Both the position numbers and the translations under genes were made by a program. A stretch of 42,087 bases of DNA from Octopus bimaculoides (lineage: Eukaryota). Where the stretch lies: contig NC_068989.1 of the NCBI RefSeq assembly GCF_001194135.2, positions 55,878,574 through 55,920,660 of the forward strand. The letters run 5' to 3'. The notes under the pieces are model-generated. The model did not search any database. It had not been told where the DNA came from and saw only the letters and a program-made list of their open reading frames with translations. This document shows, piece by piece, positions 21,996 to 42,087 of the stretch. The stretch's first letter is position 1. Each line of letters begins with the position of its first letter.

Positions 21996-22000
21996 ACATA

Positions 22001-22962: not shown

Positions 22963-23026
<64 letters not shown>

Positions 23027-23143
23027 ATTAGGGGCAGCTAGGATACTTAAGAGGGTTTCTGGCATCTAAGGTTACTTGTTGTAGCCTGATGTTAGGAATT
23101 TTTCTTTTCCAACAGTCTAATCTGCTGTGTGTATATGAATAAC

Positions 23144-23178
<35 letters not shown>

Positions 23179-23528
23179 TGATGATGATAATAATAATAAT
23201 AATAATAATGATGATGATGATAATAATAATAATAATAATAATAATGATGATGATGATAATAATAATAATAATAATAGCTGAATGAAAGGTGGATTCAATA
23301 TTTGGAATGGGATACAAATGTGAATAATGCTTATGATTAATGCTTACCTTATAAATAATATATATACATAAATCTTTATTTGATTTTCATATGATATTGA
23401 TTGGTGAGTATTGCTACCACTAGGGAGAACATGTTCTGAAATGCCCTGTTCAGGCATCTTATATAACATAACATCTATTAAAGGGTAAATATGAATCAGT
23501 AGTTTCTGAGATTCAAAGTACAATGTAT
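22450..23528 (-). pseudogene. Gypsy reverse transcriptase (split by the 22960-23277 repeat insertion)
   Basis: FESQKLLIHIYPL...KMPEQGISEHV; YPIPNIESTFHSA; FLTKFNLDSDYHQIQI; GIK..AIFQ; catalytic YQDD decayed to YQYN at 22723-22734. Confidence 0.8.
22960..23277. repeat. (TAA)n, about 105 bp unique, then (AAT/GAT)n, inserted in RT
   Basis: Directly visible; produces poly-I/poly-L ORFs. Confidence 0.9.
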
Positions 23529-24262
23529 CTTTTTCTTTTACTTTTACTTGTTTCAGTCATTAGGCTGTGGCCATGCTGGGGCACTGCCTTGGTGAATTTT
23601 TAGTCAAATGAATCAACCTCAGTACTTTTTTTTTAATTTAATTCTGGTACTTATTCTATCAGTCTGTTTTGCCGAACCACTAAGTTACAGGAACATAAAC
23701 ATACCAACACTGATTGTCAAGCGGAGACAAGGGACAAACACACACACACACATACACACACAAACACACACATGTATATATACTGGTGATGGTACCACAT
23801 AAAAAGCATCCAGTCCACACTGTGAAGTGGTTGTTATTTGAAAGGGCATCCAGCTGTAAAAACCATGACAAAACTAACCTCACCTGTGCTGGTGCGATGT
23901 AAAAAGCACTCAGTCTACTGTATGGGGAGGTTGGTGTTAGAAAGGGCATCCAGATATAAAAACCATGCCAAAACAGACACAGTAGCCTGGTGTAGTCTTC
24001 TACCTGGCTGGCTTGTCGACCATCCAACCCATGCCAGCATGGAAGACAGACATTAAATGATGATGATCATCATCATATATATGTATATATGATCGGCTTT
24101 TTTCGGTTTCCATCTACCAAATCCACTCACACGGTTTTTTGTTGGCACAAGGTTATAGCAGAAGACACTTGCCCAAGGTGCCATGTAGTGAGACTGAACC
24201 CTGTGAAGCATATGGCTGGAAAGCAAGCTTCTTACCACATAGTCAAATCAAGCCAAGCCTAT
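23529..24262 (-). mobile_element. SINE family B split by an RTE tail
   Basis: Tail half at 23529-23782 and head half at 24079-24262. Confidence 0.8.
23783..24078 (+). mobile_element. RTE-type 3'UTR with an internal duplication of about 105 bp and a (GAT)n tail
   Basis: Two AAAAAGCA...GGGCATCCAG..TAAAAACCATG units, then CCCATGCCAGCATGG; 11-bp TSD ATGTATATATA (23772-23782, 24079-24089). Confidence 0.75.
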
Positions 24263-24359
24263 GTGCACTTTCTTTTAATCTAGTATTAGTTTTACAAACT
24301 TTAAGCATACCAATAGTGTTAAAATAAACATACCAGACTTGATTAGTCTTGAGCTCTCA

Positions 24360-24640
24360 ACATTTAATACATCAATCCCAGAGATATTAGAATTTTTAAC
24401 ACAACCCACAACCATCACAACTCCAACTTCAAATTAAGTGCCTATTTCTAATTTATCTCCAAAGCAGACCAATTTTAGTATTTGATCTACCAAATGAATG
24501 AAGTTTAAGAGTCCTTTATTCTCGGGAAGTTTTAGTTGACCACTGAGTATGCAAAAGGTTCTTAAAAGAAAGGTAAGCTTACAGCCTGTATCCACTTCCA
24601 TTTTTAAACTGATGCAGTTTAACTTGAGGTAAAAGTTTAT
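24360..24640 (-). pseudogene. Gypsy aspartic protease
   Basis: KMEVDTGCKLTFL (DTG at 24584-24592) and C-terminal NISGIDVL (xLGxDxL-like). Confidence 0.75.
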
Positions 24641-24659
24641 TTACACTGTCATGTATCTC

Positions 24660-25870
24660 TAATGTCTCATTATCCACATTCTCTGTTTTTACTTTTCAAA
24701 CTTACTAAAAGTTTAGGGGGTTTTTTGTGTTTTTTTGTTTTTTTTTTCAATGGCACTATTTACATATCTTTCCAGCTGCTGCACATTTTCCCTTTCAGAA
24801 ACACGTGTTCATTCATAGCCATAAGCTTTACACCTTTAAAACTTTCAGAGAAAAATAAACTGTACTTCATGAGATAAAATAATTTCCTGTTGTTGAATAA
24901 ATTTCAAAGATGCATCTGGAGATATATTTCCCAGTTGAAATTGTTCCACTATCCTTGATCTATTTGATTTTTTTTTTTTTATCTTTTATCTTTTACTTCT
25001 TTCAGTTATTTAGATTGTGGCCATGCTAGGAAATCACCTTGAAAAATTATAATCAAACAAATAAGCCCCAGTGTTTATTTTTTAAAGCCTGGTACTTATT
25101 CTATCAGTCTCTTTTGCTGAACAACTAAGTTATGGGGATGTCAAGTGGTGATGGGAAGACAAACACAGACAGAAAGATACACACACACACACATCAGGTT
25201 TCTTTCACTTTCCATCTATCAAATCCACACACACACAAGGTTTTGTTCAGCCCAAGGCTATTGTAGAAGACACTTGCTTAAGGTGCCATGCAGTGGGACT
25301 GAACCCAGAACCATGTGGTCAGGAAGCAATCTTCTTGCCACACATCTGCAATATTTGGTTCATGCCTCCAATAAGTTTCATCCGAATCAATACCTCTTCA
25401 AAACATGGGATCCCTTGACCAAGTCTGTCATATACAGAAACAGGGTCCAACACAAAGATATTGCAAATAATTAAAACTAGGCTCAGACAATTCTTGATAA
25501 AAGGGATATATATATCTAATACTTTCAGCAATGACCACTACTTTTTAGGTCCCATATTGTTCAATAGATTCTGTAATTTAATTAAAATATATGTCCTCTA
25601 GGTACATGGGATTAACCAACAGGGACACTTTCCTAAATGCCCGAAGACTTGCTTTCAATAGAAATACATCTGTTATCTCCTGAAGACCACAGCATTCATT
25701 ATCATCATCCTTCAATTCCTTGGCTGAAGAAGAAGCCACAAAACATCACAACCATATTTCAATAGAGTCACTATCAGTTAATAACAATTCAGATCCTACA
25801 AGCATTGGAATACATAATTCAGCAACAAGTGAATATAGCAATATCAGAAATAGGTAGAAGTACATAAATG
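24660..25870 (-). pseudogene. Gypsy gag (split by a SINE B)
   Basis: One frame with scattered stops: KVVVIAESIRY..FYQELSEP..NYLQYL...RGIDSDET, matching the VIAERxRF..Q..ES..Y...GIxSDExR pattern of invertebrate Gypsy Gag. Confidence 0.65.
24970..25351 (-). mobile_element. SINE family B, full length, inserted in gag
   Basis: Full homology; possible 9-bp TSD TATTTGATT/TATTTGGTT (24961-24969, 25352-25360). Confidence 0.85.
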
Positions 25871-25945
25871 GAAAATTCTATTCAGCTGTAAGTCTACAAA
25901 TTCTAGTACATAAAACCAACTTAGGAACTGCACTCAGCTATAATT

Positions 25946-25975
25946 TGGTACGCAGACATGCCATGTTATAATGTC
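25946..25975 (-). other. Candidate PBS and last 12 nt of the 5' LTR
   Basis: Minus strand GACATTATAACA|TGGCATGTCTGC. The 12-mer matches the 3' LTR end (GTCATTATCACA, 10/12) and is followed by TGG. The rest of the 5' LTR is not detectable. Confidence 0.45.
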
Positions 25976-26566
25976 AGCAGAATTCTGGATTAAGCACCCC
26001 AAATAACCCCTCATAATTTCTTCTATTCTGGGAAATTTTCAGAAAATGTTTGCAAATTTGTTTTCTACACATAAGAATTCATACAATTATGAAAAACAAT
26101 TTTTGTTTGTATGTGTGACTTAAGGGTTATTTGGCTGTTGTCTTTAGCATATCTCAGGACCACCTTGATACCTTCCTCATTTCTTTGTCATTCTGACCTG
26201 TATTGATGTTTTTCAATATTTTTCTTCCCCTAAACATATTTAATGGAATGACAATGCACCTAAGTCCATTGCTGGACTTGAAGCAAAAAATTCAGACTGT
26301 CCATATTTTAAACTCTGACTTAAAAAAAAGATTAAAAAAAGAGTGAAACTTTTAGGATTTACAGGGCAGGAGGTTTAAAAGATTTTAAAAAATTCTTTTC
26401 TTTTTTTCATAATCATATGAATTCCCATGTGTAGAACACAAATTCACAAAGATTTTTCTTTTTAATTCCAAAAAATAAACAAGTTATGAAGAGTTTTATG
26501 TGATGCTTAAACCAAAATTCCACCATAATGTCTTTACTTTTCTCATATCCTGGTTCTGGCTTCTCT

Positions 26567-26716
26567 TGTCACATAAACCATTATGTATAAGGATGCCAGA
26601 GATTTATTATCATCAACAGATATTTTTACTCATTCTTCTAACTGTCCGGGTGTAACCAGAGTAGTGTAAATGATAAAACAATTAATACAAGATAATATAT
26701 AACATATTACGTGACA
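26567..26716. mobile_element. Possible 150-bp solo LTR
   Basis: TGTCACATAA...TTACGTGACA (10-bp terminal inverted repeat, 1 mismatch, TG...CA); no TSD seen. Confidence 0.4.
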
Positions 26717-27022
26717 ATACTATAAATTTAGTTATACTTCATACTAAGTACTTTTTTCATATTACTTCCAAATATATCGTCATTGTCATTTTTACATTCA
26801 CTTTCCCATGCTGATATGGGTTGGTCAGGTTATCCCGGACCATATAAGTTCTTATTTGAAGCTACAACTCATCTAAACAAACTAGGCCCACATCTTGTTC
26901 ATATACTTCATTTTGGGTATATTTTCTATACCTTTCTTATCAGTATTGGCTTTATTTTTACCTCAGAACAAAGCCTGTTTCAATGACCCTGCTATACTGG
27001 TATTAATTTCATTGTTAAGTTC

Positions 27023-27460
27023 TTAACCCTTTAGCATTTAAACCAGCTATATCTGGCCAAAATATTCTACCTGTTTTATGTTCAAACTGACCAGATCTGG
27101 CATCTCACACTTACCCTACTACGTTATTCTAAAAATAAACACTCATGTCATTGAAATTTCAAAGCTACAAGATAATCCTTTCTGCTAAAGACACAAGGCC
27201 TGAAATTTTGGAGGAGGGGACTAGTCAATTACATCAATCCCAGTGCTTCACTGGTACTTAATTTATCAACCCCAAAAGGATGAAAGGCAAAGTCAACCCC
27301 AGCGAAATTTGAACTCAGAACATAAAGGCAGAAGAAATGCTGCTAAGCATTTTGCCCAGCGTGCTAACGATTCCACCAGTTAGCCACTTTAAAAGCTACA
27401 AGATAATGCATAACTAATGCAAATTGATGTGAATAAATAATCGAAACATTAAAGGGTTAA
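27023..27460 (+). mobile_element. piggyBac-type MITE (family P1) with a nested SINE
   Basis: TTAA|CCCTTTAG ... TTAAAGGG|TTAA. Confidence 0.85.
27177..27391 (-). mobile_element. SINE family A nested in the MITE
   Basis: Perfect 16-bp TSD AAAGCTACAAGATAAT (27161-27176, 27392-27407). Confidence 0.9.
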
Positions 27461-27797
27461 GGGTGTAAAATTGTAAGCACTACTGAACCAAAACCAAACA
27501 TGTGGTTGCTCAACCTGCTATAATTAACAACCAAATCGTCCCCAAATCCTGCTGCCTTATAAATGAAGGACACAAAAAGAGAAATATAGGATTACAGTTG
27601 GAATGCTTTTGATCATAAATCTACTCAATAAGGGATATCTTATAACTAAAGAACTAAGAGAATCATGAACCCACAGACAGATGCCACCAAGATCAAGTGA
27701 AGTGTTTGGTGCTAGAATGTGTTTTAACTAAATTTCACAACTTCCTGTACAAAGAAGAAAGTTAAATTGTATAACTAGAACAATCTTGTTATATTCT

Positions 27798-28570
27798 AGA
27801 CATAGAGGAGGGAGAGGAGGAGAGAAAGACAGGAGGGGGAGAAGAAAGAGAGAGTAGGGGAGGAGAAAGAAGGGAGAGGAGAGGGGGGAGAAAAGAATAA
27901 GTTTAGTGACAGAGTCAGTGGCAGAGGGTAAAAGTAAAAGGAACTATTAAAAAAAAAAAAGGTGTCTGACATAAATGTCATTTGGAACAGAAGTGTTTTG
28001 ATGGGGGGTGAAGAGGGAGTAATTCTAGTGAGAAGTGGGCAAAGGAGTTAGGTTTAATTACTGAAGTAATTAAATCAGGGGTCACAGGGTGCTTTGGTGG
28101 AGCAGAGGGGGAGCTTGAGTGGCTTCAATTACTGGAGGTTTTTTTTTTTTAGATAGATTTTTTTTCTTTGTTTAGTTGTTCATTTGTTTTTGGTTTTTTT
28201 AATTCAATAGGAGTAAACCAGGAAAACTGATGCTAAGAGATATTTAGAGAGGTGACAGAAATGGGAGAGAAAGAGAAAATGGTGGGAGACAGAGAGAGAG
28301 GAGAAAACAAGATAGTGTGAGAAGAGAGGAGAAATAGGGAGAAAAAAGTAAGGGAAATGAGAGGAAAATATGCAATTAAGAGAGAAGTGAAATAGAATGA
28401 AAGAGAATTTTCTCCTTGGTTGGAATATTAGCAGGAGAAACAGAAACACACGGAGGTAAACTTTTGAGAAAGAAATGCTTCATTAGAAGATTTCTTTCCC
28501 TGATTGGTAATGAATGTAGGAACTGAGGAAAGAAGAAGGAACAAAGAAATATAAGAAAAAAGGAGTGAAA
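27798..28570. repeat. Purine-rich (GA) low-complexity tracts with a central poly-T stretch
   Basis: Directly visible. Confidence 0.85.
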
Positions 28571-28629
28571 AGGATCTATTTTCCATTATATAATTAATTC
28601 AAACAATCTCTTCAGGATTCAAAGATTGC

Positions 28630-28757
28630 ATCAGTGTGTGTATGTGTGAGTGTGTGTCTGTCTGTATATGTGTGCGAGAGTAAAATTGTATGCTTTCATG
28701 TGTACTTAAATATTTAATCATGCAGCTATGTAAGAGCATGTGTGTGTGTATATATAT

Positions 28758-28790
<33 letters not shown>

Positions 28791-28960
28791 TATATACAAA
28801 TGCATGCAGTCATGAGTCCATGTAGGTGGTGGTGGTGGGGAGTGTACATAAATGTATAGTGGCAAGTAGCTATGTAAGAGGGTATGTGCATATACGTGTA
28901 AACATAAATGTGTGTGTGTGTGTGTGTGTGTGTGTGAGCGTGCGCATGTGTGAGTGTGCT
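28630..28960. repeat. Compound (TG)/(TA)/(TACA) microsatellites
   Basis: Directly visible. Confidence 0.9.
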
Positions 28961-29334
28961 TGGCCCCAGGTCAGTGTTGATCAAACAGAAATACGATCAA
29001 AAGCATTCCAGAAGTAAACAAACTGGCTTAATATGCAGGAAACCAAGGGCCATTATGCAAAGCATTTCCTCTAAGACAGCATTTCCAAAACCTATTTTTG
29101 CCCCCAGACTCCACAATAACTTCCCAGAAAAATGTATTAATGGTTGGAAAAAAACAACTGTATTTTAAATATTTTATCACAATTATTTAATACAAAAGAA
29201 TCTACTGGTAACCCTTTAAGTAAAAAAAGGATTTTCATAATTCCATGCCCCACTAAAAAAAAAAAAGGAAAAAAAATTGAATCCCATGCCCCACCAGTGG
29301 GGTGCATACCCCTTGTTATGAATCACTGCTCTAA

Positions 29335-29560
29335 GATCATCATCATCATCATTTAACGTCCACTTTCCATGCTGGCATGGGTTAGATGGTTTGACTGGAA
29401 ATGGTAAACCAGGGAGCTGTACCAGGTTCCAGTCTGATTTGGCATGGTCTCCATGGCTGGATGCCCTACCACTCCCAGAGTGCAATGGGCTCTTTTACGT
29501 GCCAGTGGCACAGGTGCCATTTGCATGACACCAGCAATGGCCACAACTATGATTTCATGG
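29335..29560 (-). mobile_element. RTE 3' tail
   Basis: (CAT)n-TTAACGTCCACTTTCCATGCTGGCATGGG...GGCTGGATGCCC. Confidence 0.8.
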
Positions 29561-29639
29561 GTTTCATTTACACAACACCAGCAGGGTATCAAGGGAATTT
29601 GGCTGGTAATTCCAGCTGTTCAGTCGATTGCATGTATGC

Positions 29640-29880
29640 GCTTATTTGTAAGGTGGCACGTAAAAAGCACCATCCAAACGTGGTTCATGCCAGTGCCCCA
29701 TGAATGGCTCCCGTGCTGGTGGCACATAAAAAGCATCATCTGAAAATGGTAAATGCCAGGTCCACCTGACTGGCTCCTGTACCAATGGCACATAAAAAGC
29801 ACCCACTACACTCTCGGAGTTGTTGGCATTAGGAAGTGCATCCAGCTGTAGAAACATTGCCAGATCAGACTGGAGCCTTG
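29640..29880 (+). mobile_element. RTE 3'UTR with three units of about 60 bp, opposite in orientation to its neighbours
   Basis: Three GCACRTAAAAAGCA units, then CCCACTACACTCTCGGAG...GCATCCAGCTGTAGAAAC...CAGACTGGAGCC. Confidence 0.8.
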
Positions 29881-30100
29881 GTCACTAGTCATTGCCTCGG
29901 TGAGGCCTAATGTTTGAAGGTCGTGCTTCACCACCTCATCCCAGGTCTTCCTGGGTCTACCTCTTCCACAGTTTCCCTCAGCCGCAAGGGTGTGACACTT
30001 TTTCACACAGCTATTCTCATCCATTCTCACCACATGACCATACCAACGCAATCGTCTCTCTTGCACATCACAGCTGATGCTTCTTAGGTTCAACTTTTCT
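29881..30100 (-). mobile_element. RTE ORF2 C-terminus
   Basis: RRLRWYGHVVRMDENSCVKKCHTLAAEGNCGRGRPRKTWDEVVKHDL (RWxGHVxRM and GRPRKTW motifs). Confidence 0.9.
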
Positions 30101-30174
30101 TAGTAATTTTTTTTACCAACAATCTCTGTTTTCAGATACGGAGGTTCCGGAAAATTGTCAAAAATTGGCATTGT

Positions 30175-30566
30175 NNNNNNNNNNNNNNNNNNNNNNNNNN
30201 NNNNNNNNNNNNNNNNNNNNNNNNNNNNNNNNNNNNNNNNNNNNNNNNNNNNNNNNNNNNNNNNNNNNNNNNNNNNNNNNNNNNNNNNNNNNNNNNNNNN
30301 NNNNNNNNNNNNNNNNNNNNNNNNNNNNNNNNNNNNNNNNNNNNNNNNNNNNNNNNNNNNNNNNNNNNNNNNNNNNNNNNNNNNNNNNNNNNNNNNNNNN
30401 NNNNNNNNNNNNNNNNNNNNNNNNNNNNNNNNNNNNNNNNNNNNNNNNNNNNNNNNNNNNNNNNNNNNNNNNNNNNNNNNNNNNNNNNNNNNNNNNNNNN
30501 NNNNNNNNNNNNNNNNNNNNNNNNNNNNNNNNNNNNNNNNNNNNNNNNNNNNNNNNNNNNNNNNNN
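30175..30566. other. Assembly gap (392 N)
   Basis: N run. Confidence 1.
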
Positions 30567-30954
30567 GGGGGTAATTTAGAAATGTCGATTTTTGCCAATT
30601 TTTTTGTAGATTCATATTCCCCGTAGCCAAAAAGGGGGAGTTTGTGTCAAAAAAAATTTTTTTTTTAAAAGGGTGGTTTTTTTGTGGGGGGACGGGCGGA
30701 AGTCTTGCCCTATTTAGTTATGGCTACTAGAATGACAGGGAATAAGTCCAACGCTATCTACCCTTTAACAAGAAAGTATAATACTTGTTACCTCGTATGC
30801 TTTCTGACTGTTTTTATACATGCCGGTCCATCGTGGTTTGGCTTTAATTATATAAATGGTGAAATAAATGTTATCTACAACTTCAGCCACTGTCTTTCTT
30901 GGAGTCAACATCAACATCTTTGCCTTCAACATAGACAACTACCATTAGAAATCA

Positions 30955-31259
30955 TTTGACTGTGGTCATCACTTTGAAGAGTTTTAGTCTAACAAATCAA
31001 CCCTAGGACCTAGTTCTTATTCTATCAGTTTCTTTTGCTGAACCATTAAGTCACAGAGTTGTAAATGCACCAACACTAGTTGTCCAGCAGTGGTGAGGTG
31101 ATAAACAGATACACACACACACAAATATACGGCAGGATTCTTACAGTTTCCGTCTACAAAATCTACTCACAAGGTTATAGCCCAAGGTGTCACCCAATGG
31201 GACTGAATCCAGAACCATGTGGTTGGGAAGCAAGCTTCTTACTACACAGCCATGCCTAT
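30955..31259 (-). mobile_element. SINE family B with internal deletions
   Basis: Tail and head homology with central (CA)n. Confidence 0.8.
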
Positions 31260-31342
31260 GTATACATGCACACACATACATCAAAATAAATACATACTGA
31301 TAGATAGACAGACAGACAGATACATACATATACAAAATAATT

Positions 31343-31699
31343 AAAATTCAGAAAACGGAGAAGTAACATTAATATAATTTATTAACTACAAAAATTCAAC
31401 GATCTTACAGCTGTTTCGATTTTGCCCAAAGAATTAAATTCCAGTAATTAAAAGACTTTATGTGCAAAATCTCGTCAGAGGAGTAAAAATGACATACCAA
31501 TGGATTATTATATGGAAGAATAACACATAATAACCTAGTGTTATGTCGTTTTTACTACTCTGACGAGATTTTGCCCAATAAAATATTTTAATTACTGGAA
31601 TTTAATTCTTTGGGCAAAATTGAAACAGCTGTAAGAGAACGTTGAATTTTTGCAATTAATAAATTACATTAATGCTACTTTTCCGTTTTCCGAATTTTT
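31343..31699. mobile_element. Foldback/MITE-like long inverted repeat
   Basis: Arms 31343-31496 and 31542-31699 are near-perfect reverse complements with a 45-nt spacer. Confidence 0.85.
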
Positions 31700-31761
31700 A
31701 TTTGAATATTTGTAAACCAAGATTTATACTTAAACCTATTATTTTATGAATATTACTATTC

Positions 31762-31800
<39 letters not shown>

Positions 31801-32239
31801 ACAGGCACACACACATACATAATTAACTTAGTGATTTGGTTATTTGTGTCCAACCATGTGTGAATATGGATAGAGATGTACACCATCAAAGTGTGTAGCC
31901 CAGAGATTGATAGTAGACGGATTGTTCTTGTTTGTTTTTTTTTAAACATGGAGTAACACACTATACTATGGCAGAGACAGACAGAAGGATGGACAACACA
32001 ACTTACGTGGAACGAATACTTAATCTGTTGACTATCCGTACATACTCTGTGTGCGTGTGTGCCTACGGGAACTATGTGTATGATGGTGTTTGTTGTGTGT
32101 GGGTGTAAACTGACGGCATTATAATTCATTATTTATAATCTATCTATAGTAATCTATCACATTTCAGTGTCTATTTCTAAATCGTTATATATTGATATCA
32201 ATCCATCCATCCGTCACCGTATTCAATCAACAAGCTATG

Positions 32240-32309
32240 AAAATTTATATATATATAGAGAGAAAGATACAGACAAATTAGAAAGACAGATAGATATATA
32301 TATATAGAG

Positions 32310-32351
<42 letters not shown>

Positions 32352-32721
32352 GTATTTATATGTATGCATATGCATTATATATATATAAGTATATATATAA
32401 ATAGATGTATATATTGATGAATATTTACACACACACATACTTTTATAGATAGTTGACAGCTATTCAAGTTTTGCCGGTATTTGACCTCATCAGAATGTTC
32501 CGTTTTTAAACTTATAATCATATGTATGAATGTATGTTTATAAAGATGTATGCATACATATACAAGCAATTTAATTTGTATGTAATTATAAATATATATG
32601 TGTGTGTGTGTGTGTATGTATATATATATATATAATATATATATTGTGTGTAGTTACAGATTTGTGTATATAAATATCCAATAAAATACCCATTTATATA
32701 CATGTGCATATGTATACAGGG

Positions 32722-32780
<59 letters not shown>

Positions 32781-32900
32781 TGTATGTATATAGTATTATA
32801 CATACACACAAAGACACACATATATACACACACAAGTATATATACATACAAACACACGCACATATATATACACACACGCACACACATATATATATAATCC
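32240..32900. repeat. Compound (GATA)/(TA)/(TG)/(CA) microsatellite field
   Basis: Directly visible. Confidence 0.95.
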
Positions 32901-32902
32901 AC

Positions 32903-33163
32903 TACTTGTTTCCCTCACATAGACTGCGGCCATGCTAGTACACCGCCTTGAACAATGTAAGTTGAACGAATTGACCCCACTACCTTTTTTTTTTAACACC
33001 AGGTACTTATATCGGTTGTTTTGCTGAACCGCTACGTTACGGGTACGTAAACACATCAACACCGGTTGTCAAGCTGTGGTGGAACTCACATGCACACACA
33101 CACATATATCTAATATATATATACAACGGACTTCCTTCAGTTACCGTCTACCAAATCCACTCA
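32903..33163 (-). mobile_element. SINE family B lacking the head, CpG-retaining
   Basis: GACTGCGGCCATGC...GAACCGCTACGTTACGGG...CCGTCTACCAAATCCACTC. Confidence 0.8.
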
Positions 33164-33357
33164 AATATACATGTATACATATATATTTGTGTGTTTGTGT
33201 ATATATATATATATAATTTCCACACATGTAGTTACGTGTGTGTGTATCTATTCACATACAAGCACGTTTTGTGTGTTTATATAAATATATGTACGTAAGT
33301 ATTTATATGTATGTGTGTATATATATATATGTGTGTGTGTGCATATGTATGTATGCG

Positions 33358-33557
33358 TAAAGAAGCCCGTCGTATATATGTATGTGTGTGTGTTGGTCCC
33401 CCCAACATCGTCCCCGTAACTAGGTTCGGCAAAAAAGACCGATAGAATAAGTACTAGGCTTACAAAGAATAAGTCCTGGGGTCGATTTGCTTGACTAAAG
33501 GTGGTGCTCCAGCATGGCCAAAGTCAAATGACTGAAACAAGTAAAAGAGTAAAAGAG
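33358..33557 (+). mobile_element. SINE family B 3' half, CpG-retaining
   Basis: GAAGCCCGTCG...GACCGATAGAATAAGTACTAGG...GACTGAAACAAGTAAAAGAGTAAAAGAG. Confidence 0.85.
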
Positions 33558-33601
33558 ATATGTATGTGTATGTGTGAATATATATATATATATGTGTGTG
33601 T

Positions 33602-33887
33602 NNNNNNNNNNNNNNNNNNNNNNNNNNNNNNNNNNNNNNNNNNNNNNNNNNNNNNNNNNNNNNNNNNNNNNNNNNNNNNNNNNNNNNNNNNNNNNNNNNN
33701 NNNNNNNNNNNNNNNNNNNNNNNNNNNNNNNNNNNNNNNNNNNNNNNNNNNNNNNNNNNNNNNNNNNNNNNNNNNNNNNNNNNNNNNNNNNNNNNNNNNN
33801 NNNNNNNNNNNNNNNNNNNNNNNNNNNNNNNNNNNNNNNNNNNNNNNNNNNNNNNNNNNNNNNNNNNNNNNNNNNNNNNNNNNNNNN
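33602..33887. other. Assembly gap (286 N)
   Basis: N run. Confidence 1.
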
Positions 33888-34294
33888 TGTGTATATATAT
33901 ATATATACTCACACGTGTATTGTTGTGTTTGTATGTAATGTATTGTACTGTATGGTAAAATCTGAAATGATATGGGTGTTCCTTGGACAGTAATGTCTAT
34001 TTGGTCCCACGCTAGGCTGGTGTTGTACAACGAAAGCCATTCAACCACGACCATTTATCGACATCGCTGCAGCCTCCACCATGAACAAGCCTCATCTCTT
34101 ACAAAAATATAAACAACAATAATTTTTTTTACCCCTTTCACTCGCCGCCTCTTTCCTTTTTTTTTCTCCTCTTTCTCGCAGTTTTGCTATTTTTCTTTTC
34201 ACGGTTGACCGATTTCTCCGCTGACTGGAGTCAATTCCAAACACACTAAAGCTTGTTAATGGCTGCTGCTGCTATTGCTACTTGTTTGTGTTAG

Positions 34295-34461
34295 TATGCA
34301 TATGTGTGTGTGTGTGTGTGTCTATGTGTGTGTGTGCGTGTATGTGGTCATGTTTGTACTGTGAGTGTATATGTGTGTGTGTGTAACTATGTGTACTTGT
34401 TTATATTTTTGTCTATGTATCTGTGAAGTTGTGTATGTACATGTTTGTATAATTGTATGTA

Positions 34462-34492
<31 letters not shown>

Positions 34493-35150
34493 CTGTGACT
34501 GTGGCTGTAATTGTTTATATTTGTGTCTATGGAGTTGTGTCTGTATGTTTGTATGCGTATTTGTATATATGTGTGAGTGTGTGTTTGTGTGTACGAATGT
34601 GTTGTGTCTATATCTGTCTGTGGGCGCGCGTTCGTTATTTGCTCTGTGTGTGTGTGCGTATGTGTTTGTGTGTGTGTTTTATGTGTCTATATGTAACAAA
34701 CGCAGCAACTGTTTTTGTTTTGTGTGGGGGAGGGGTAACTTGTACAGCTCCTTCAGTTACCCTGCCGCTATCACGTACACAGGCACATACAAATAAGCTT
34801 ATATATATATATATATATACGCTCCGACTAGAGTTTAACAGTTACTAATTTAGGCTTAAACACACAGACACAAATATATTTATACACACACATACCTATG
34901 TATTTGTGCTCTGTAGCGCACATATACACACACATGCACACACTCCAGCATATGATGCTTAAATACACACACATACACATATATATATATACATATATAT
35001 ACAAACACATTTAAATACTACCTCCCGTACAGACATACATACACATTAGCTCAAACACTAATATATATATATACACACACACATAATGAACTCATATACA
35101 CATATATACAAACATTCAATCAAACACTATTACACATACACTAATACATA
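34295..35150. repeat. Degenerate (TG)n then (CA)n/(TA)n microsatellite field
   Basis: Directly visible; source of the CV/HT-rich ORFs. Confidence 0.9.
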
Positions 35151-35269
35151 CACATGCATAATAAACATTCACTCAAACACGACCACACATACACGCATAC
35201 GTATACGTCAGCTAAAACACTGATACACACACATAATGAACGCACCACTACACATCACACGCTACTTAC

Positions 35270-35400
35270 TACTTCCACTACTCCTCAAATAGTGAACCCA
35301 GACGATAAAAGTAGGAGGAAGGGGAAGATAACGAAGAAGTAGAAGAAGAAGAAGAAGAAGAAAGAGGTTAGCAACACCGCCATATTGTATAGCGTTCTTT
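35270..35400 (-). other. Candidate first (5'UTR) exon of an unidentified gene
   Basis: Starts near the YY1 motif and ends at the donor GAAGTA|GTAAGT (35269-35264). Contains (TTC)n and a 32-codon ATG ORF. The start coordinate is approximate. Confidence 0.4.
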
Positions 35401-35500
35401 CTGCGCACCGCTGACTGCGCACCTCCTAATGACGTCACGTCAACATACACACATACGAAATCATGCACGGCTAAGCCAGACGTGACCCCTATGAACGCAT
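35370..35500 (-). promoter_or_regulatory. Candidate core promoter (YY1, CRE, paired TGCGCA)
   Basis: CCGCCATATT at 35377-35386; CTGCGCACC twice (35401-35409, 35415-35423); TGACGTCA at 35430-35437 overlapping CACGTCA; locally CpG-rich and non-repetitive. Confidence 0.6.
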
Positions 35501-35504
35501 GGCC

Positions 35505-35717
35505 CTGCTCCCCTTCTTTCTCATCCCTCTCCCCTGTCTTATCTTTTATCCTTTCTTTCAGCCACCTATATATTCTCTTTTTCCCTCTTTTGCTCACTTA
35601 CTCTTTCTCTGAAAAACTTTCGTTTTCTTTTCTTCTTTACTTATCACTACCTCCTACACCTTGTTTTATCTTCGTTTTTTTTCCGCCTTCCTTTCTCTCT
35701 CTCTCTCTCTCTTTCTG

Positions 35718-35754
<37 letters not shown>

Positions 35755-35853
35755 ATTCTTTTTTTTTTTCACTTTCTCGCTTTCCTCCACTTTCTACATA
35801 TTCCTTATGATCTTTTTTTTACTTTCTAATCCCTCTCTCTCTCTCTTTTTCTT

Positions 35854-35887
<34 letters not shown>

Positions 35888-35890
35888 ATA
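35505..35890. repeat. Polypyrimidine/(CT)n tract upstream of the candidate promoter
   Basis: Directly visible. Confidence 0.9.
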
Positions 35891-36105
35891 GCCTGACCAG
35901 GTCAAAGTCAATACTTGAAAGAAGACATGACTGCGGCGAGTTTTCTTTGTTCAGAGGCGTAACAAGGAAAGTAATTTAAATGTATAATATATGCACATGT
36001 ACACACATACGTACACACACACACACACACATATGTATATAGATTAGTTGAACCCCCCCAGATGTGTTCATCTTTTATGTGAATATATATATAAATATAT
36101 GTGTG

Positions 36106-36138
<33 letters not shown>

Positions 36139-36320
36139 ATGTGTGTATGTATGTATGTATGTGTGCGCATGTAACTTTGTTTACATAAATGCTGGAATCT
36201 TAAATCGACTGACTCTTTATTCTACCGACCTGGATCAGATGAAAGACAATGTTGACCTCTACGGGGCTTCAACTCAACGTAACAAAGTAGTGTAAGCATT
36301 TTGTACGATGCTCGAACGAT

Positions 36321-36368
<48 letters not shown>

Positions 36369-36545
36369 AAGAGAAAGAAAGCTAGGCAAATAGATGTAGA
36401 TATACATGCATGCATTCATACATACAGATGTATATGCGCGCGCGTGTGTGCAACAGTAAGCTATTTTGGTTTGGTTAGGAAATGGAAAAGCAGAAGTCTG
36501 TGTGAAGTTCTGAATACAAAATATTTGGTACTACTTTAACGTAGT

Positions 36546-36652
36546 CTAACTCTAACGCTAATCCTAAACCCTAACCCTGACCCCCAAAACCTAATCCTAA
36601 CCCTAAGCACCAACCCTAACCTTAAGCCCTAAATCTTAATTCTAACCCAAAC
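36546..36652. repeat. Degenerate (CCCTAA)n telomere-like array
   Basis: About 18 hexamers including exact CCCTAA and variants CTCTAA, TCCTAA, CCTTAA, CCCTGA. Confidence 0.8.
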
Positions 36653-36840
36653 CAGTTCATTTTATAGCGTAGACTACGGATACTGCAGTTGACTGCACGC
36701 TAATATAGCACTAAATATCTATTATTGTTAACAAAAATGTTGTTGGGCAGAACCAAAGAGAATTATATATTTATAGCAAGTAAAACAGTTTAGTAGTCTG
36801 TATCTACAGCAACGACAGTGACCGTGGGTAACGCAGATTT

Positions 36841-37168
36841 TTGACAGACCGTTATGAGCAAAAATGACCACTGTAAGTTACTAGACAAACGATCTACGTG
36901 TGAAATCTATACATAACGGTCTGTCAAGAAAAGAGAGAGAGAGAGAGAAAAAAAAAAGCGCTAAAAATAAATTGCAGAGGAAATTCCTGTTTCTGCAAGA
37001 AATTTCAGTGGACAGTTGTCTACTGACGTCATCAATCTTTGACAGAATCCTGTATTTGTTATTTAGTTGTCTTTTCGGTTGAAGAGGGATTTCTATCAAA
37101 GATTTGAGTGGTTTGTTGTTTCACTGACGTTATTCATTTTTGGCAGAATCCTGTTTGGGCTGTTTAGT
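36841..37168. promoter_or_regulatory. Candidate cis-regulatory module (TGACAG and CRE repeats)
   Basis: A 16-bp perfect inverted repeat containing TGACAG, plus a 46-bp direct repeat, each copy with a CRE-like and a TGACAG-like site. Confidence 0.35.
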
Positions 37169-37284
37169 AATTTCATACATCTGATTCGGGTTCGTTTTTT
37201 TAGGCAGTGAGATGGTGTTTCGAACTACCAAATATTCTTGCTACATATGTGTGCGTGTTACACACACACACACACACCTTTACC

Positions 37285-38010
37285 TCTTAATTGTTCCAGT
37301 CATTGCGCTATGGCCATGTTGTGGATCTACCTTGAAGGGTTTAATCGAAGAAACCGAACTCTACATATACTTTTAAGTCTGGTACCAATTTTATTGATCC
37401 CTTTGCCAAACTGTTAAGCTACAGGGACGTAAGCAAACAAACACCGGTTGACGAACTGTGTGGGTGGGGGCACATGCGCGCGCACACACACATGTATCCA
37501 TATAGGTTGTACGTCTATAAGGGATATCTCAAGTCGGATACCGCAGTTAATTAAGCTTCCCATGACGTATCTACATTGAGTAGGGTACACAGATTGCTCG
37601 GTTAAACTAATACAGCTTCTGCAACGTATAAGGATCTTTTACTTAACTGATCGGCTATTTTGCAAACCAATGACTTTCCAGTTACTGTTTTCCTAAGTCA
37701 GTGACTACAGATTCTCTCAAAGTGTGCTGCCGCCATTGGGTGCCTGCTACTGACAAATATCTAACACTGTACGTGTATAAGAGATCTCAGGACGATTATT
37801 GCAGTTAAGCTTTCCATAATGTTTCGGCATTACTATGGTACAAACACACACATATACGACAGGATTCTTTACAGTTTCCGTTTACCAAATTTGCTCACAA
37901 GGCGGTCAACCGGACGCTATGGAAGAAGCGATATCCCCACGATGTTGCACAACGGGACAGAACAAAGAAACCATTTGTTGAAAGTTCTTAACCACATAAA
38001 CATGCCTGTA
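37285..38010 (-). mobile_element. SINE family B split by an insert of about 340 bp
   Basis: Tail half at 37285-37496 and head half at 37839-38010. Confidence 0.7.
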
Positions 38011-38209
38011 TATAAACGTATGTAGAGTGTATGTATGTGTGTGTCTTTTCTGTATATAAACTTGTAGATATGTATATACATACATTTATGAGAATGATGT
38101 TACACACATTGTACATATATGGAAAACTTCTACCTACTGCTGGGTTTTTCGGAGTTTATATAATACACACACGTATCTGTGTGTAAATATTTGTATGTGT
38201 GTGCGCTCA

Positions 38210-38241
<32 letters not shown>

Positions 38242-38501
38242 TGTGTGTGTTGTTAAGTAACTTCTAAGACATTTATAACACAAAATCTGAAGTTATGAAA
38301 TTGCGAGATGTAAAAATACCTATATGTGTTGTCATTTTGATTACTCCAAGAACATTACTATGACAGAGAAAGTTAGGTAGGAAGGCGGAAGCGACAAAGT
38401 AGTGAATCTAGGTTTTAAAACGAAGAGAAAGTATTTGAGGTTATCAAAGTAAAGCAGTCATGTAGATTTTAAAGAAGGGCCTTTGGTTTTGAATTAACAT
38501 A

Positions 38502-38672
38502 GTAGGCTGTGTAGTTTAAAAAAAAACTTGCTTTGCAGCCTCGTAGTTTCGCATTCTGTGCCACTGTACGGCACCTCGGGCTGTCTTCAACGATAGCCCC
38601 GAGTCAACCATTGCCTTGTGAGCAAGAATGGTATGAGAAAACTGTATGGAAACCCGTCGTGTATGTGTGTGT
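38502..38672 (+). mobile_element. SINE family B head, diverged but CpG-retaining
   Basis: GGCTGTGTAG...GGCACCTCGGGC...GCCTTGTGAG...GAAACCCGTCG. Confidence 0.6.
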
Positions 38673-38723
38673 GAAAAAATGTATAGTAAATGAACAAACG
38701 TAAAACAGACACAGAATATATAT

Positions 38724-38943
38724 ATATTTCTTTATTGCTCACAGAGGGCTAAACATAGAGGGGACAGACAAGGGGATTAAGTCGATTACATCGACTCCAG
38801 TGATTAACTGGTACTTATTTAATCGACCCCGAAAGGATGAAAAGCAAAGTCGACCTCGGTGGAATTTGAACTCAGAACGTAACGGCAGACGAAATACCGC
38901 TAAGCATTTTGCCCGGTGTGCAAACGTTTCTGCCAGCTCGCCG
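38724..38943 (-). mobile_element. SINE family A, CpG-intact
   Basis: CGACCCCGAAAGGATGAAAAGCAAAGTCGACCTCGGTGGAATTTGAACTCAGAACG...GCCAGCTCGCCG. Confidence 0.9.
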
Positions 38944-39499
38944 TGTAAGAAAGAGAATATGTGTGCTTGCGCGTGTGTGTTCCTATAACTTAGCTAGTTA
39001 TCGACGAATCATATGACGAAGTAACTGGTCTGGTAGAGTTTTGTTCCAAAACAGTTTGCATGTCACACGTAGCCACATGGTTTAATTTTAACCGGATGAT
39101 ACTAGACTACGATGATTGTACGTGAAAGAAAAATAATTCCACTTTAGGTAAACAGGGATTGTATATCGTGTAATTGTGCATGAACCGAGTAGGATGGAGG
39201 TAATCTCGGTGAGACAGATTTGGCAATTGCGAACTTGAGATGAGTATCCATGAGCCCTGTAAGACTGTTTCGTGTAGTAGGTGAGGCAAGTCTTATTTTT
39301 TTTATTTATTTATTTTAGTACTGCTGGAATCTCCAGATAAAACAAGAGAATGAAATAGATTTCTCCTTGTCCCAACACTTGATGAAGTGCCTGTCTCGCA
39401 CTCCTTCAGGCATCAAGGAAATCTTTCCTTGAAATCATTTACTTTTATGCCCATGTACACACACACATACATACATACCCATTCATCCATACATACATA

Positions 39500-39541
<42 letters not shown>

Positions 39542-39551
39542 NNNNNNNNNN
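39542..39551. other. Assembly gap (10 N) within (TA)n
   Basis: N run. Confidence 1.
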
Positions 39552-39595
<44 letters not shown>

Positions 39596-40695
39596 ATTGG
39601 ATGGTGGTGAGTGTGGTTCTATAGACCACACCCTTTGAGAAACAGGATACTCCAAATGGGCTGTTGGTGGTTTTTCGACAGTTACAGATTGAGATGTGGA
39701 ATGAAGATTGTGTGGGATGTTTTTATTTCTGCTGTATCGGGAAATATTGGAAACGTTATTATCTAAGCACAAGTAGCTAACTTTGATATTATGACCATTA
39801 GAATATTTATTATATATTTAAGTTCTTTGGAAATGCCGAATTAGGGACTGGAGTTTCTAGCTGCATTAGTAGATAAATCTAGACTGATGGAAGATTGAGT
39901 CATATTAAATTTCTGAATCTCAATCTTTTGAGGATGGGAATGAAACCCTAAGAGACTGAGAAAGAGAATGGTAATAAAAATTAACTTATCAGTAAAGCAA
40001 CATTTTGCTAATACCACGTTTGCGGCCCTCCTGGAGATTTGTCTGTGTGCCGAAAGACGGGAGATTCTTCTGCTGATATCTGTGATATCTAATTACAACC
40101 GACGTTTTCTACAGAATCTACAATTATGTGTGTATTTACACGTATGCACGCACGGAAACAGTAGATACTATACGGTTGAGTAGTTGAGAAGCCAACAAGA
40201 CCCAGGTTTCGATCCCAATTACACGGTATCTTAGGCAAATGTCAATTTTTATAGCCTTAGAGCTATCTGTGTGTCAACATATGTGTGTACACACACACAC
40301 ACACACATTGATTCAGTCATAATAATTTAGAAAGTTCGAGAAAACGTGAAATAATTCAAAGTAGATATAACTATGAATAGTAGCATATAAATATTGGGAC
40401 ACGAACCTACATCTGTTAACTTGACATCTGTTCTATCATTAGACGTTCAAAATTCTCTGTCCATTTCAGACGCTTTGTTCTTATCAACGAGAATTATATG
40501 TTGTTTACATCGTAAGAATTTAGAAACTTTGAGAGAGTGTGAAACGATCAGTTTATAACTGTAGAACTCGGAGTAGATAAAGCTGTAAATTATAGCTTTT
40601 AATCCAATATTTACACGCTATGCTATTATATATAGATTTATCTACTTTGAGTATAAGGAGTTAAAAATAAACGATGCAACTTTCCTTTTTCTTCC

Positions 40696-41015
40696 TGGGA
40701 AAACAAGGCATCAGAATGCAGGACCTGGCGTCAGTCCTGCTTCTCCGCTATTCAAAAATTTGAGCAAAATTGACTCCAAAACCGGACCAACTTCGTGCAA
40801 GCATGAAGGCAAGCTAGCAAAACACTGCTACTCTAAATGGAAACCTTACCTGTCATTGTGGTTTTATGGTATGGAAGCAAAGCAGGCCTAGCCGTCCACT
40901 CAAGAAAACACAGTAAATATAATCCGCACTCAAGCAAACTGAGACCTCAACTTGTTCCATTTGCCAAATGGTTTGCAAGGCACTAGCAGGCCTCAAGAGA
41001 CACATTCGTATCCAT
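40696..41015 (+). mobile_element. RTE-like LINE ORF2 C-terminus with two C2H2-type fingers, decayed
   Basis: WENKASECRTWRQSCFSAIQKFEQN*; TCHCGF..(frameshift)SKAGLAVHSRKH; TCSICQMVCKALAGLKRHIRIH (40953-41015). Confidence 0.65.
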
Positions 41016-41129
41016 ATAGCATGCTCAATGCTTTATTTTACTGAACTCTCATTTATCGTTCACGACAAGAGAACCCATCGTATATACATAAAACTGATAA
41101 GAGTAGATATCAAACCGTGATTTTAGCCG

Positions 41130-41305
41130 TACGGTAGGGTAATAAAAAGTTCCTGGCTTTAAGGGTATCGTGAAAGACCTGGCTTGCAGCCCAACCTTCC
41201 AAGTTCTTTTACAGGGTTTAGAAAAACTGAAGGACCAATGCGATAAGTGTATGAAACTGAGAGGGGGAACATGTTGAATAAAATCATAACTGATCCTCCT
41301 GTATT
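41130..41305 (+). mobile_element. mariner-type MITE carrying the transposase C-terminus, right TIR missing
   Basis: TIR core AAAAGTTCCTGGCTTTAAGGG, then LQGLEKLKDQCDKCMKLRG(+1 G)EHVE*. Confidence 0.75.
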
Positions 41306-41431
41306 GGTACAAGAGGTGGCCAGACTCTGGATAAGGAGTAGACAATCACCATGTATGTATGTATGTACAGTGTCATAGCCCCAGGTTAGTCGATGCTACC
41401 AATCGGTTTTGAACTGGCTATTAGATAACCG

Positions 41432-41514
41432 GATATTAGATTACAACACGGCCAAATAACAGCACATGATCGTCAGAGTACGTGCTGTTATTTAACTGCG
41501 CGTTATCTAATATC
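41432..41514 (-). other. 83-nt imperfect hairpin (pre-miRNA-like or TE subterminal)
   Basis: Core AAATAACAGCAC/GTGCTGTTATTT; most mismatches become G-U pairs on the minus strand. Confidence 0.45.
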
Positions 41515-42087
41515 TAATTCTTACTGTCTTTCTGTTTCTGGATATGAGTGCAATAAGAGCTTAGACAATTTCTTTTCTAAGCCCTTATTATAATTATACA
41601 TATAACTTCACCTTAATCGGTTCCCTTTTATATGCTGGCCACTGATAATATTTTTAAAAAGTTTTATCCTCTATTATGCATGTATGTGTATAAATATATG
41701 CATGCCTGTGTGTGTGTGTGTGTGTGTATGAGAGAGAGTGTGAGAGGGGGAGAGAGAGTATTAAAATTAAAATTCTGTCTCAGATTTTAGAGAAAACTTC
41801 ATTGTAGCGATAAAGTTTTCAGTTAATATACTCTACTACACAAGCCCTCTTGCCTAAAATAATTTTCAGTATATTTCTAGAGTCTGGAATGTTGAAAACA
41901 GAAAATTTTGTTCCTTCTTTCAGAAACTTCCCTGCATTGTGTTTGGATGAAAAATACGCATATGTACGCGAAAACAGATACTCACAAACACAAATATACA
42001 TCATTTAGGGACATACACTAGCTATCTGCCTATCTACTTAACTCTCTCTCTCTCTCTCTTTCTCACTCACTTATATATATATATATG

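What the first reader, a model, noticed from the sequence alone, without database searches (positions are those of the whole stretch)
30567..42087. Fossil methylation boundary read from repeat copies: CpG decayed left of about 30.5 kb, retained to the right
Homologous sites differ by side. In family A, GTCGACCTCGG is intact at 38849 but reads GTCAACCTCAG, GTTAACCTCAG, GTTGACCTCAG and GTCAACCCCAG at 2169, 16871, 17102 and 27292. In family B, GCCCGTCG/ACCCGTCG is intact at 33362 and 38649 but reads GCCCATCA/GCCCATTG at 5264, 11440 and 19147. Even the very diverged B head at 38502 keeps CpGs, arguing for a regional rather than an age effect; young RTE tails at 1 and 29335 are exceptions. Known: invertebrate mosaic methylation marks gene bodies and spares promoter and intergenic DNA. 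Inference: a long minus-strand gene starts near 35.4 kb and germline methylation begins 4-5 kb downstream.
Basis: partly seen in the sequence, partly recalled or inferred. Interest (0 to 1): 0.7.

Follow-up and report, generated by a model that had tools for sequence, protein, structure and literature searches.

The report
Old DNA-methylation boundary in octopus-like DNA
About 31 kb of this octopus-like sequence has lost almost all its CpG sites and the next 11 kb has kept them, which is the ordinary, already known footprint of long-term germline methylation of one domain (probably a gene body) next to an unmethylated one.

Summary
CpG observed/expected is 0.17 over 1-31.3 kb and 0.77 over 31.3-42.1 kb, with G+C unchanged (35-36%). 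The contrast is the same in unique and in repeated DNA. Copies of two SINE-like families keep 12 of 234 ancestral CpGs on the left and 45 of 91 on the right, although the right-hand copies are the more diverged at other sites. This is therefore a regional effect, not an age effect. Nearly all losses are to TpG or CpA.

The step is not at the 392-N gap. A 510-bp stretch right of the gap, including one SINE copy, is as decayed as the left side. In old sequence the boundary lies at about 31.34-31.92 kb. The CpG-richer DNA at 29.3-30.8 kb is an RTE tail plus an unidentified stretch that may be a young insertion.

The best explanation is the mutational footprint of mosaic germline methylation, as described for Octopus bimaculoides. 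The only named relative is an Octopus vulgaris protein (83% identity).

Promoter-like motifs and strand skews fit it, but no coding exon was found on either strand. This is a known phenomenon and of modest interest.

The parts
1..29331 (.). CpG-depleted domain. Over 1-30174 o/e is 0.166 and TpG+CpA o/e is 1.35. Includes decayed copies of families A and B and LINE/LTR relics.
29332..30099 (-). 5'-truncated RTE-type LINE tail with a (ATG)n 3' end at 29335. G+C 48.6%, CpG o/e 0.29: partly decayed.
   Evidence: (83% identity to an Octopus vulgaris hypothetical protein)
30100..30830 (.). CpG-normal stretch on both sides of the 392-N gap (9 CpG in 339 read bases). Unidentified: either a young insertion or a small unmethylated islet.
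   Evidence: a 22-nt inverted match lies at nearly mirrored positions, 2 and 15 nt from the gap edges
30175..30566 (.). Assembly gap (392 N). It is not the true boundary.
30831..31340 (.). Last CpG-depleted stretch (3 CpG, o/e 0.17). Contains the B copy at 30950-31253, which keeps 2 of 21 ancestral CpGs.
   Evidence: Poisson P = 5e-4; Fisher against right copies p = 0.001
31339..31702 (.). 364-bp foldback (hairpin) element, arms 85-95% complementary, CpG o/e 1.3. It sits exactly at the step.
31341..42087 (.). CpG-retaining domain (o/e 0.77), which runs off the end of the window. Its A copies (36211, 38726) and B copies (32903, 33359, 37277, 37838, 38505) keep 45/91 ancestral CpGs.
35262..35450 (-). 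Candidate promoter and non-coding first exon: TGACGTCA at 35430, CCGCCAT at 35377, and a GTAAGT donor-like site on the minus strand near 35265. Local G+C and CpG peak. Not verified.
35500..35890 (.). CT-rich / (CT)n tract, which reads as (GA)n on the minus strand, upstream of the candidate start.
38726..38944 (+). Family A copy that keeps 13 of 17 ancestral CpGs, including GTCGACCTCGG at 38849.
27161..27407 (+). Family A copy in the depleted domain, keeping 3 of 17. The other left copies are at 1680, 2041, 16735, 16970 and 20999.
5121..5528 (+). Full-length family B (tRNA-like SINE) copy in the depleted domain, keeping 1 of 23. Other left copies are at 3094, 11296, 15182, 19048, 23532, 24041 and 24979.
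33602..33887 (.). Assembly gap inside a (TA)n/(TG)n microsatellite, within the retaining domain.
39542..39551 (.). 10-N gap inside a (TA)n microsatellite.

Best explanation
The window spans a long-standing boundary between two domains of an octopus-type genome. One domain was methylated at CpG in the germline (1 to about 31.3 kb). The other was not (about 31.9 kb to beyond 42.1 kb).

5-methylcytosine deaminates to thymine, so everything in the methylated domain lost its CpGs to TpG and CpA. This applies to unique DNA, SINE copies and LINE relics alike. The per-cytosine loss was about 17 times the transition rate at other sites. In the neighbouring domain, CpGs decayed only slightly faster than any other dinucleotide.

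The methylated domain is most likely the body of a transcribed gene, here apparently one long intron. The unmethylated domain would then be its 5' end, promoter and upstream intergenic DNA.

What is shown: the CpG contrast, its CpG-to-TpG/CpA nature, and its independence from repeat age. What is inferred: that methylation is the cause, that the domain is a gene body, that the gene is on the minus strand, and that it starts near 35.4 kb. The confidence given is for methylation as the cause of the boundary; for the specific gene model (minus strand, start near 35.4 kb) it is about 0.45.
For: The step in CpG o/e is 0.17 to 0.77 at constant G+C.

The contrast is the same in unique and in repeated DNA.

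At ancestral CpG sites the left copies show 12 CG, 192 TG or CA, and 30 other. Observed over expected retention is 0.07 on the left and 0.77 on the right, with higher non-CpG divergence on the right. The result holds when sites are chosen from one side only.

TpG+CpA o/e in unique DNA rises from 1.20 on the right to 1.32 on the left, about what the lost CpGs should add.

CpG retention among RTE tails within the left domain is graded: 0.67, 0.29, 0.14 and 0.

The taxon is octopus-like. The O. bimaculoides methylome has under 10% of CpGs methylated, clustered in gene bodies and introns. It includes 8972 genes with a methylated body but unmethylated TSS and promoter (PMC9476566).

For a minus-sense transcription unit: unique DNA of 1-29.3 kb has A>T by 5.5% and A+C of 52.1% on the plus strand (p about 1e-10). 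That is a T and G+T excess on the minus strand.

Promoter-like motifs lie at 35.38-35.43 kb.
Against: No methylation data were available, so the cause is inferred from mutation patterns alone.

No coding exon was found on either strand. The left domain is therefore not shown to lie in a gene. Exons in ORFs shorter than 35-40 aa would have been missed.

The skew in 31.3-35.4 kb runs the other way, T>A on the plus strand, although degenerate TG microsatellites dominate that stretch.

Non-CpG transitions in the repeat copies show no strand asymmetry.

The CpG-normal stretch around the gap (30100-30830) interrupts the depleted domain and is unexplained.

The published study reports very low methylation on octopus transposons in general, whereas here intradomain SINEs are fully decayed. 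This fits only if transposons inside methylated gene bodies are methylated along with them.
Confidence: 0.8

Rival explanations
1. Scaffolding artefact. The 392-N gap joins two unlinked contigs with different CpG histories, so there is no real boundary at this place in the genome.
For: With no exclusions, the maximum-likelihood change point is 30047 (support 29576-30148), right next to the gap. The content and length of the gap are unknown.
Against: On the right-hand contig itself, 30831-31340 has o/e 0.17 (3 CpG where 13.9 are expected at the right-hand rate, P = 5e-4). Its B copy keeps 2/21, which differs from the right copies (p = 0.001) but not from the left copies (p = 0.32). The step therefore lies inside contiguous sequence at about 31.34 kb. 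The same repeat families occur on both sides. A 22-nt inverted match lies at nearly mirrored positions about the gap edges. Excluding 29332-30830 moves the change point to 31356 and the fit improves (2*dlnL 264).
Confidence: 0.06
2. Age or composition effect. The left side simply carries older repeats or different sequence, and the CpG loss follows overall divergence.
For: Within the left domain, RTE tails show graded CpG content (o/e 0.67 to 0), so age does matter within a domain.
Against: Right-hand copies are more diverged at non-CpG sites (0.198 against 0.142) yet keep ten times more CpGs. Retention does not correlate with divergence within either side. Unique DNA shows the same contrast. 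G+C is equal on both sides.
Confidence: 0.02
3. The left domain was methylated, but not as the 5' part of a minus-strand gene. It could be the 3' part of a plus-strand gene ending near 31 kb. It could also be a methylated non-coding or otherwise targeted domain. The proposed start at 35.4 kb would then be unrelated.
For: No exon was found on either strand. In octopus, methylation of body-methylated genes extends past the transcript end (PMC9476566). The promoter-like motifs contain CpG and so can only survive in the retaining domain. The skew does not continue through 31.3-35.4 kb.
Against: The T>A and G+T excess lies on the minus strand over 1-29 kb, the sign seen on the sense strand of mammalian introns (my own knowledge: Green 2003, Touchon 2003; whether it holds in cephalopods is unknown). 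A TGACGTCA site, a YY1-like site, a GA tract and a donor-like site are arranged in minus orientation at 35.26-35.9 kb.
Confidence: 0.22
4. A methylation-independent regional mutation process, such as local CpG-specific hypermutation, editing-type deamination, or biased gene conversion protecting the right side.
For: Only the sequence was studied. Nothing measures 5mC directly.
Against: G+C is identical on the two sides, which argues against biased gene conversion. The loss is confined to CpG. Other dinucleotides chosen from right copies survive in left copies at 28-64%, against 1-9% for CpG. The roughly 17-fold excess at CpG is of the size known for 5mC deamination in mammals (my own knowledge).
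Confidence: 0.03

Closest known systems
Mosaic (gene-body) CpG methylation of invertebrates and its CpG-depletion footprint. Described for Octopus bimaculoides by Macchi et al. 2022 (PMC9476566). CpG o/e is used as a proxy for historical methylation in, for example, Cnidaria (PMC8857923) and oyster (PMC4378273).
   Same: There are two sharply different CpG o/e states side by side at equal G+C. The depleted state covers intron-like DNA. The retaining state covers a promoter-like region and its surroundings. The pattern matches the published class of genes with a methylated body and an unmethylated TSS and promoter.
   Different: Here the state is read from paralogous SINE copies at a single locus, not from methylome data. 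The gene itself was not identified. Transposons inside the depleted domain are fully decayed, while the octopus study stresses low methylation of transposons overall.
Vertebrate CpG islands (unmethylated promoter islands in a globally methylated genome).
   Same: A CpG-retaining region next to CpG-depleted DNA, holding promoter-like motifs such as TGACGTCA. The retention is explained by lack of germline methylation.
   Different: The retaining region is at least 10.7 kb long and has the same low G+C (36%) as its flanks. The published octopus genome is mostly unmethylated, so here the depleted domain is the exception, not the retaining one.
Use of CpG decay in repeat copies (for example Alu) to infer the germline methylation state of their surroundings in primates (my own knowledge, not checked here).
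   Same: The logic is the same: copies of one family serve as replicate probes, and CpG loss is compared with non-CpG divergence.
   Different: A different taxon and different repeat families. Only 22 copies at one locus were used.

Membership tests
Footprint of invertebrate mosaic / gene-body methylation | Two discrete CpG o/e states at similar base composition | tested here: met
   o/e 0.17 against 0.77 at G+C 0.353 against 0.360; 2*dlnL 255-264
Footprint of invertebrate mosaic / gene-body methylation | Loss is CpG-specific and goes to TpG/CpA | tested here: met
   Left copies show 12 CG, 192 TG or CA and 30 other at 234 ancestral sites. Other dinucleotides are retained at 28-64%.
Footprint of invertebrate mosaic / gene-body methylation | The effect is regional, independent of repeat family and age, and includes unique DNA | tested here: met
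Footprint of invertebrate mosaic / gene-body methylation | The depleted domain coincides with a transcription unit | tested here: inconclusive
   No exon was found. Strand skew is compatible with minus-sense transcription. Promoter-like motifs lie at 35.4 kb.
Footprint of invertebrate mosaic / gene-body methylation | 5mC is present on the depleted side and absent on the other in germline DNA | not testable with these tools
   Needs bisulfite or nanopore data for this locus.
Footprint of invertebrate mosaic / gene-body methylation | The host organism has a mosaic methylome | tested here: inconclusive
   The only named relative is an Octopus vulgaris protein at 83% identity, found with a transposon fragment. 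A mosaic methylome is documented for O. bimaculoides (PMC9476566). The species of the window is not established.
Vertebrate-type CpG island | Raised G+C (above about 50-55%) over 0.2-3 kb with CpG o/e above 0.6 | tested here: not met
   o/e is 0.77, but G+C is 36%, equal to the flanks, and the length is at least 10.7 kb.

The most novel reading that the evidence does not exclude
The methylation boundary may be fixed by a sequence element rather than by distance from a promoter. The 364-bp foldback at 31339-31702 sits exactly at the step, and the boundary has stayed within a few hundred bases long enough for SINE copies about 14% diverged to lose 95% of their CpGs. Alternatively, the depleted 31 kb may be a heavily methylated non-genic, transposon-bearing domain in a genome where transposon methylation is reported as nearly absent.
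Probability: 0.07. Interest if true: 0.6.

Novelty: already known. Interest (0 to 1): 0.25.

Why it matters
The locus is a clean example of how paralogous repeat copies can date and place a germline methylation boundary from sequence alone. It suggests the boundary has been stable to within about 0.6 kb over a long time. It also shows that SINEs inside a methylated domain of an octopus-like genome behave as methylated DNA.

Applied genome-wide, the same test could map historical methylation domains in cephalopods that lack methylome data. As a single locus it adds nothing new in kind.

Tried and rejected
Looking for the host gene:
- A Pfam scan of all non-repeat ORFs of at least 50 aa on both strands gave only an RT_RNaseH_2 relic.
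- Two homology searches were run with concatenated ORFs: minus strand of 1-35.7 kb (at least 35 aa) and plus strand of the whole window (at least 40 aa). Neither gave a hit.
- Exact-protein look-ups of two ORFs found nothing on record.
- Rfam and tRNA scans were empty.

Reading the direction of transcription from non-CpG substitution asymmetry in repeat copies gave no signal.

The single change point at 30047 was rejected as the true boundary. It is pulled by the CpG-richer RTE tail and by the stretch around the gap.

The age-effect and composition explanations were rejected.

Family D (16118 and 41145) gave only two informative sites. Both are CG on the right and TG or CA on the left.
Full report
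**1. What the window is**

The window is 42,087 bases at 35.5% G+C, with three N gaps: 30175-30566, 33602-33887 and 39542-39551. It is full of microsatellites and interspersed repeats.

A 97-aa ORF in an RTE-type LINE tail (29809-30099, minus strand) has as its only named relative a hypothetical protein of Octopus vulgaris, at 83% identity. I therefore treat the window as octopus-like. The species is not established.

No tRNA or Rfam family is present.

**2. The observation**

In 2-kb windows, CpG o/e is 0.06-0.29 from 1 to 29 kb and 0.6-0.88 from 31 kb to the end, with G+C unchanged.

| Test of the step | Result |
|---|---|
| Two-rate model against one rate | 2*dlnL = 255 |
| Scan statistic, observed | 235 |
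| Scan statistic, maximum over 2000 shuffles of 500-bp blocks | 82 |

With self-similar repeats and microsatellites masked:

| DNA class | Left o/e | Right o/e |
|---|---|---|
| Unique | 0.166 | 0.777 |
| Repeats | 0.177 | 0.724 |

So the effect is not a property of the repeats. TpG+CpA o/e in unique DNA is 1.32 on the left and 1.20 on the right. That difference is about what the missing CpGs would add.

The family A sites are at the stated coordinates and the family B sites are 3 nt further right.

**3. Repeat copies as replicate probes**

I built profile alignments of two families and collected all their copies with nhmmer.
- Family A is about 250 bp long, with 8 copies.
- Family B is a tRNA-like SINE of about 400 bp, with 14 copies.

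Ancestral CpG sites were inferred from columns dominated by CG, TG and CA: 17 sites in A and 23 in B.

| Copies | Ancestral CpGs kept | Non-CpG divergence | Non-CpG transitions per site | Observed/expected retention |
|---|---|---|---|---|
| 14 left of 29.3 kb | 12 of 234 | 0.142 | 0.086 | 0.07 |
| 7 right of 31.34 kb | 45 of 91 | 0.198 | 0.107 | 0.77 |

The left-right difference has Fisher p = 5e-19. "Expected" is what would remain if CpG behaved like any other dinucleotide at each copy's own divergence.

In the left copies, the 234 sites now read 12 CG, 192 TG or CA, and 30 other.

The result does not depend on how the sites were chosen.
- At sites chosen from left copies only (a mix of TG and CA), right copies keep 37 of 77.
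- At sites chosen from right copies only, left copies keep 5 of 128.
- Other dinucleotides chosen the same way survive in left copies at 28-64%.

The per-cytosine loss at CpG is about 17 times the non-CpG transition rate on the left and about 3 times on the right.

Age does matter within the left domain. RTE tails there have o/e 0.67 (1-196), 0.29 (29332-30099), 0.14 and 0.

**4. Where the boundary is, and the gap**

The program's warning about the gap matters here. The unconstrained change point (30047, support 29576-30148) sits next to the 392-N gap. A finer breakdown shows why this is misleading:

| Segment | Content | CpG o/e |
|---|---|---|
| 29332-30099 | G+C-rich RTE tail | 0.29 |
| 30100-30174 and 30567-30830 | CpG-normal stretch flanking the gap (9 CpG in 339 bases) | about 0.8 |
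| 30831-31340 | Depleted again (3 CpG) | 0.17 |
| 31341-31702 | Foldback element | 1.3 |
| 31703-32900 | AT-rich sequence | 0.63 |
| 32901-33601 | Sequence with B copies that keep CpG | 0.91 |

In 30831-31340, 13.9 CpGs are expected at the right-hand rate (Poisson P = 5e-4). The B copy inside it (30950-31253) keeps 2 of 21 ancestral CpGs. That differs from the right copies (p = 0.001) but not from the left copies (p = 0.32).

Excluding 29332-30830 moves the change point to 31356 (support 31256-31400) and improves the fit. Excluding the foldback as well moves it to 31918 (support 31800-32013).

The depleted state therefore continues across the gap. The real step, in old sequence, lies at 31.34-31.92 kb, inside contiguous sequence.

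This makes a scaffolding mis-join an unlikely cause. Further points against it are the shared repeat families on both sides and a 22-nt inverted match at nearly mirrored positions about the gap edges.

What the CpG-normal stretch around the gap is remains open. A young high-copy insertion would explain both its CpGs and the assembly failure, but I could not identify it.

The other two gaps lie inside microsatellites with the same motif on both sides, well within the retaining domain.

**5. Mechanism**

The simplest account is the well-known one. Methylated cytosines in CpG deaminate to thymine. A domain methylated in the germline over long periods therefore loses CpG to TpG and CpA, while an unmethylated neighbour does not.

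The octopus methylome fits this (PMC9476566).
- Under 10% of CpGs are methylated.
- Methylated CpGs are clustered in exons and introns of a subset of genes.
- 8972 genes have a methylated body but an unmethylated TSS and promoter.
- A further class is unmethylated in its first third.

CpG o/e is a standard proxy for historical methylation in invertebrates (PMC8857923, PMC4378273).

The decayed SINEs show that repeats lying inside such a domain share its fate. This is compatible with the low average methylation reported for octopus transposons only because most of them are intergenic.

**6. The gene model**

In its favour:
- The only two TGACGTCA sites of the window are at 35430 and 37024.
- A CCGCCAT site (YY1-like, minus orientation) is at 35377.
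- A GTAAGT lies on the minus strand near 35265.
- A (GA)n tract lies upstream in minus orientation.
- There is a local G+C and CpG peak.

These motifs contain CpG and could only have survived in the retaining domain, so their location is weak evidence.

Unique DNA of 1-29.3 kb has A>T by 5.5% and A+C of 52.1% on the plus strand (p about 1e-10). That is a T and G+T excess on the minus strand, the sign seen on the sense strand of mammalian introns (my own knowledge). Whether the rule holds in cephalopods is unknown, and the skew does not continue through 31.3-35.4 kb.

No host exon was found. A Pfam scan of all longer ORFs returned only a retrotransposon RNase H relic at 22245-22454. Two homology searches with concatenated ORFs of both strands returned nothing. 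If the model is right, the left 31 kb is intron.

With the corrected boundary, methylation would begin about 3.5-4.1 kb downstream of the proposed start.

**7. Verdict**

The methylation-footprint reading is well supported. The gene details are open.

The phenomenon is already known, so the interest is modest. The repeat-copy test is neat and could be applied genome-wide.

Noticed in passing
window 1-29331 (family A and B copies): CpG decay products are strand-asymmetric. On the plus strand they read 72 TG against 120 CA (binomial p = 7e-4). The bias flips with element orientation, so it belongs to the genomic strand and not to the elements. This means more C-to-T changes on the minus strand. 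Non-CpG transitions show no such bias.
   Followed up: partly
window 31339-31702: A 364-bp foldback element, with arms about 180 nt long and 85-95% complementary and CpGs kept in both arms, lies exactly at the CpG step. This may be coincidence or a young MITE-like insertion.
   Followed up: partly
window 36540-36650: A degenerate telomere-like (CCCTAA)n tract, about 110 bp long, in the interior of the sequence.
   Followed up: no
window 37010-37170: Two tandem copies of a roughly 100-bp unit (TGACGTCATCAATCTTTGACAGAATCCTGT... and TGACGTTATTCATTTTTGGCAGAATCCTGT...). The first carries the window's second perfect TGACGTCA. This may be another regulatory element.
   Followed up: no
window 30100-30174 and 30567-30830: The sequence flanking the 392-N gap is CpG-normal (9 CpG in 339 bases) inside otherwise depleted DNA. 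A 22-nt inverted match lies 2 and 15 nt from the gap edges (30150-30172 against 30581-30602). It could be a young palindromic insertion or an unmethylated islet.
   Followed up: partly
window 23532-24245: A nested insertion. One family B copy (minus orientation) is split by an RTE tail at 23786-24077.
   Followed up: no
window 1679-2279: Two family A copies lie head to head and form a 600-bp inverted repeat (73% identity).
   Followed up: no
window 27800-28560 and 35500-35890: Long purine-rich (GA-rich) tracts on the plus strand at 27.8-28.6 kb give a G-C skew of +0.26 to +0.30. A CT-rich tract lies at 35.5-35.9 kb.
   Followed up: no
window 21789-21974 (-), 22245-22454 (-), 40589-41117 (+), 9600-10400 (-): Retroelement relics. 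The first is an RNase H fragment (Pfam RT_RNaseH_2, E = 8e-7). Others are LINE C-terminal pieces with Cys/His motifs. Their CpG o/e follows the domain: 0.23-0.24 on the left and 0.64 on the right.
   Followed up: partly
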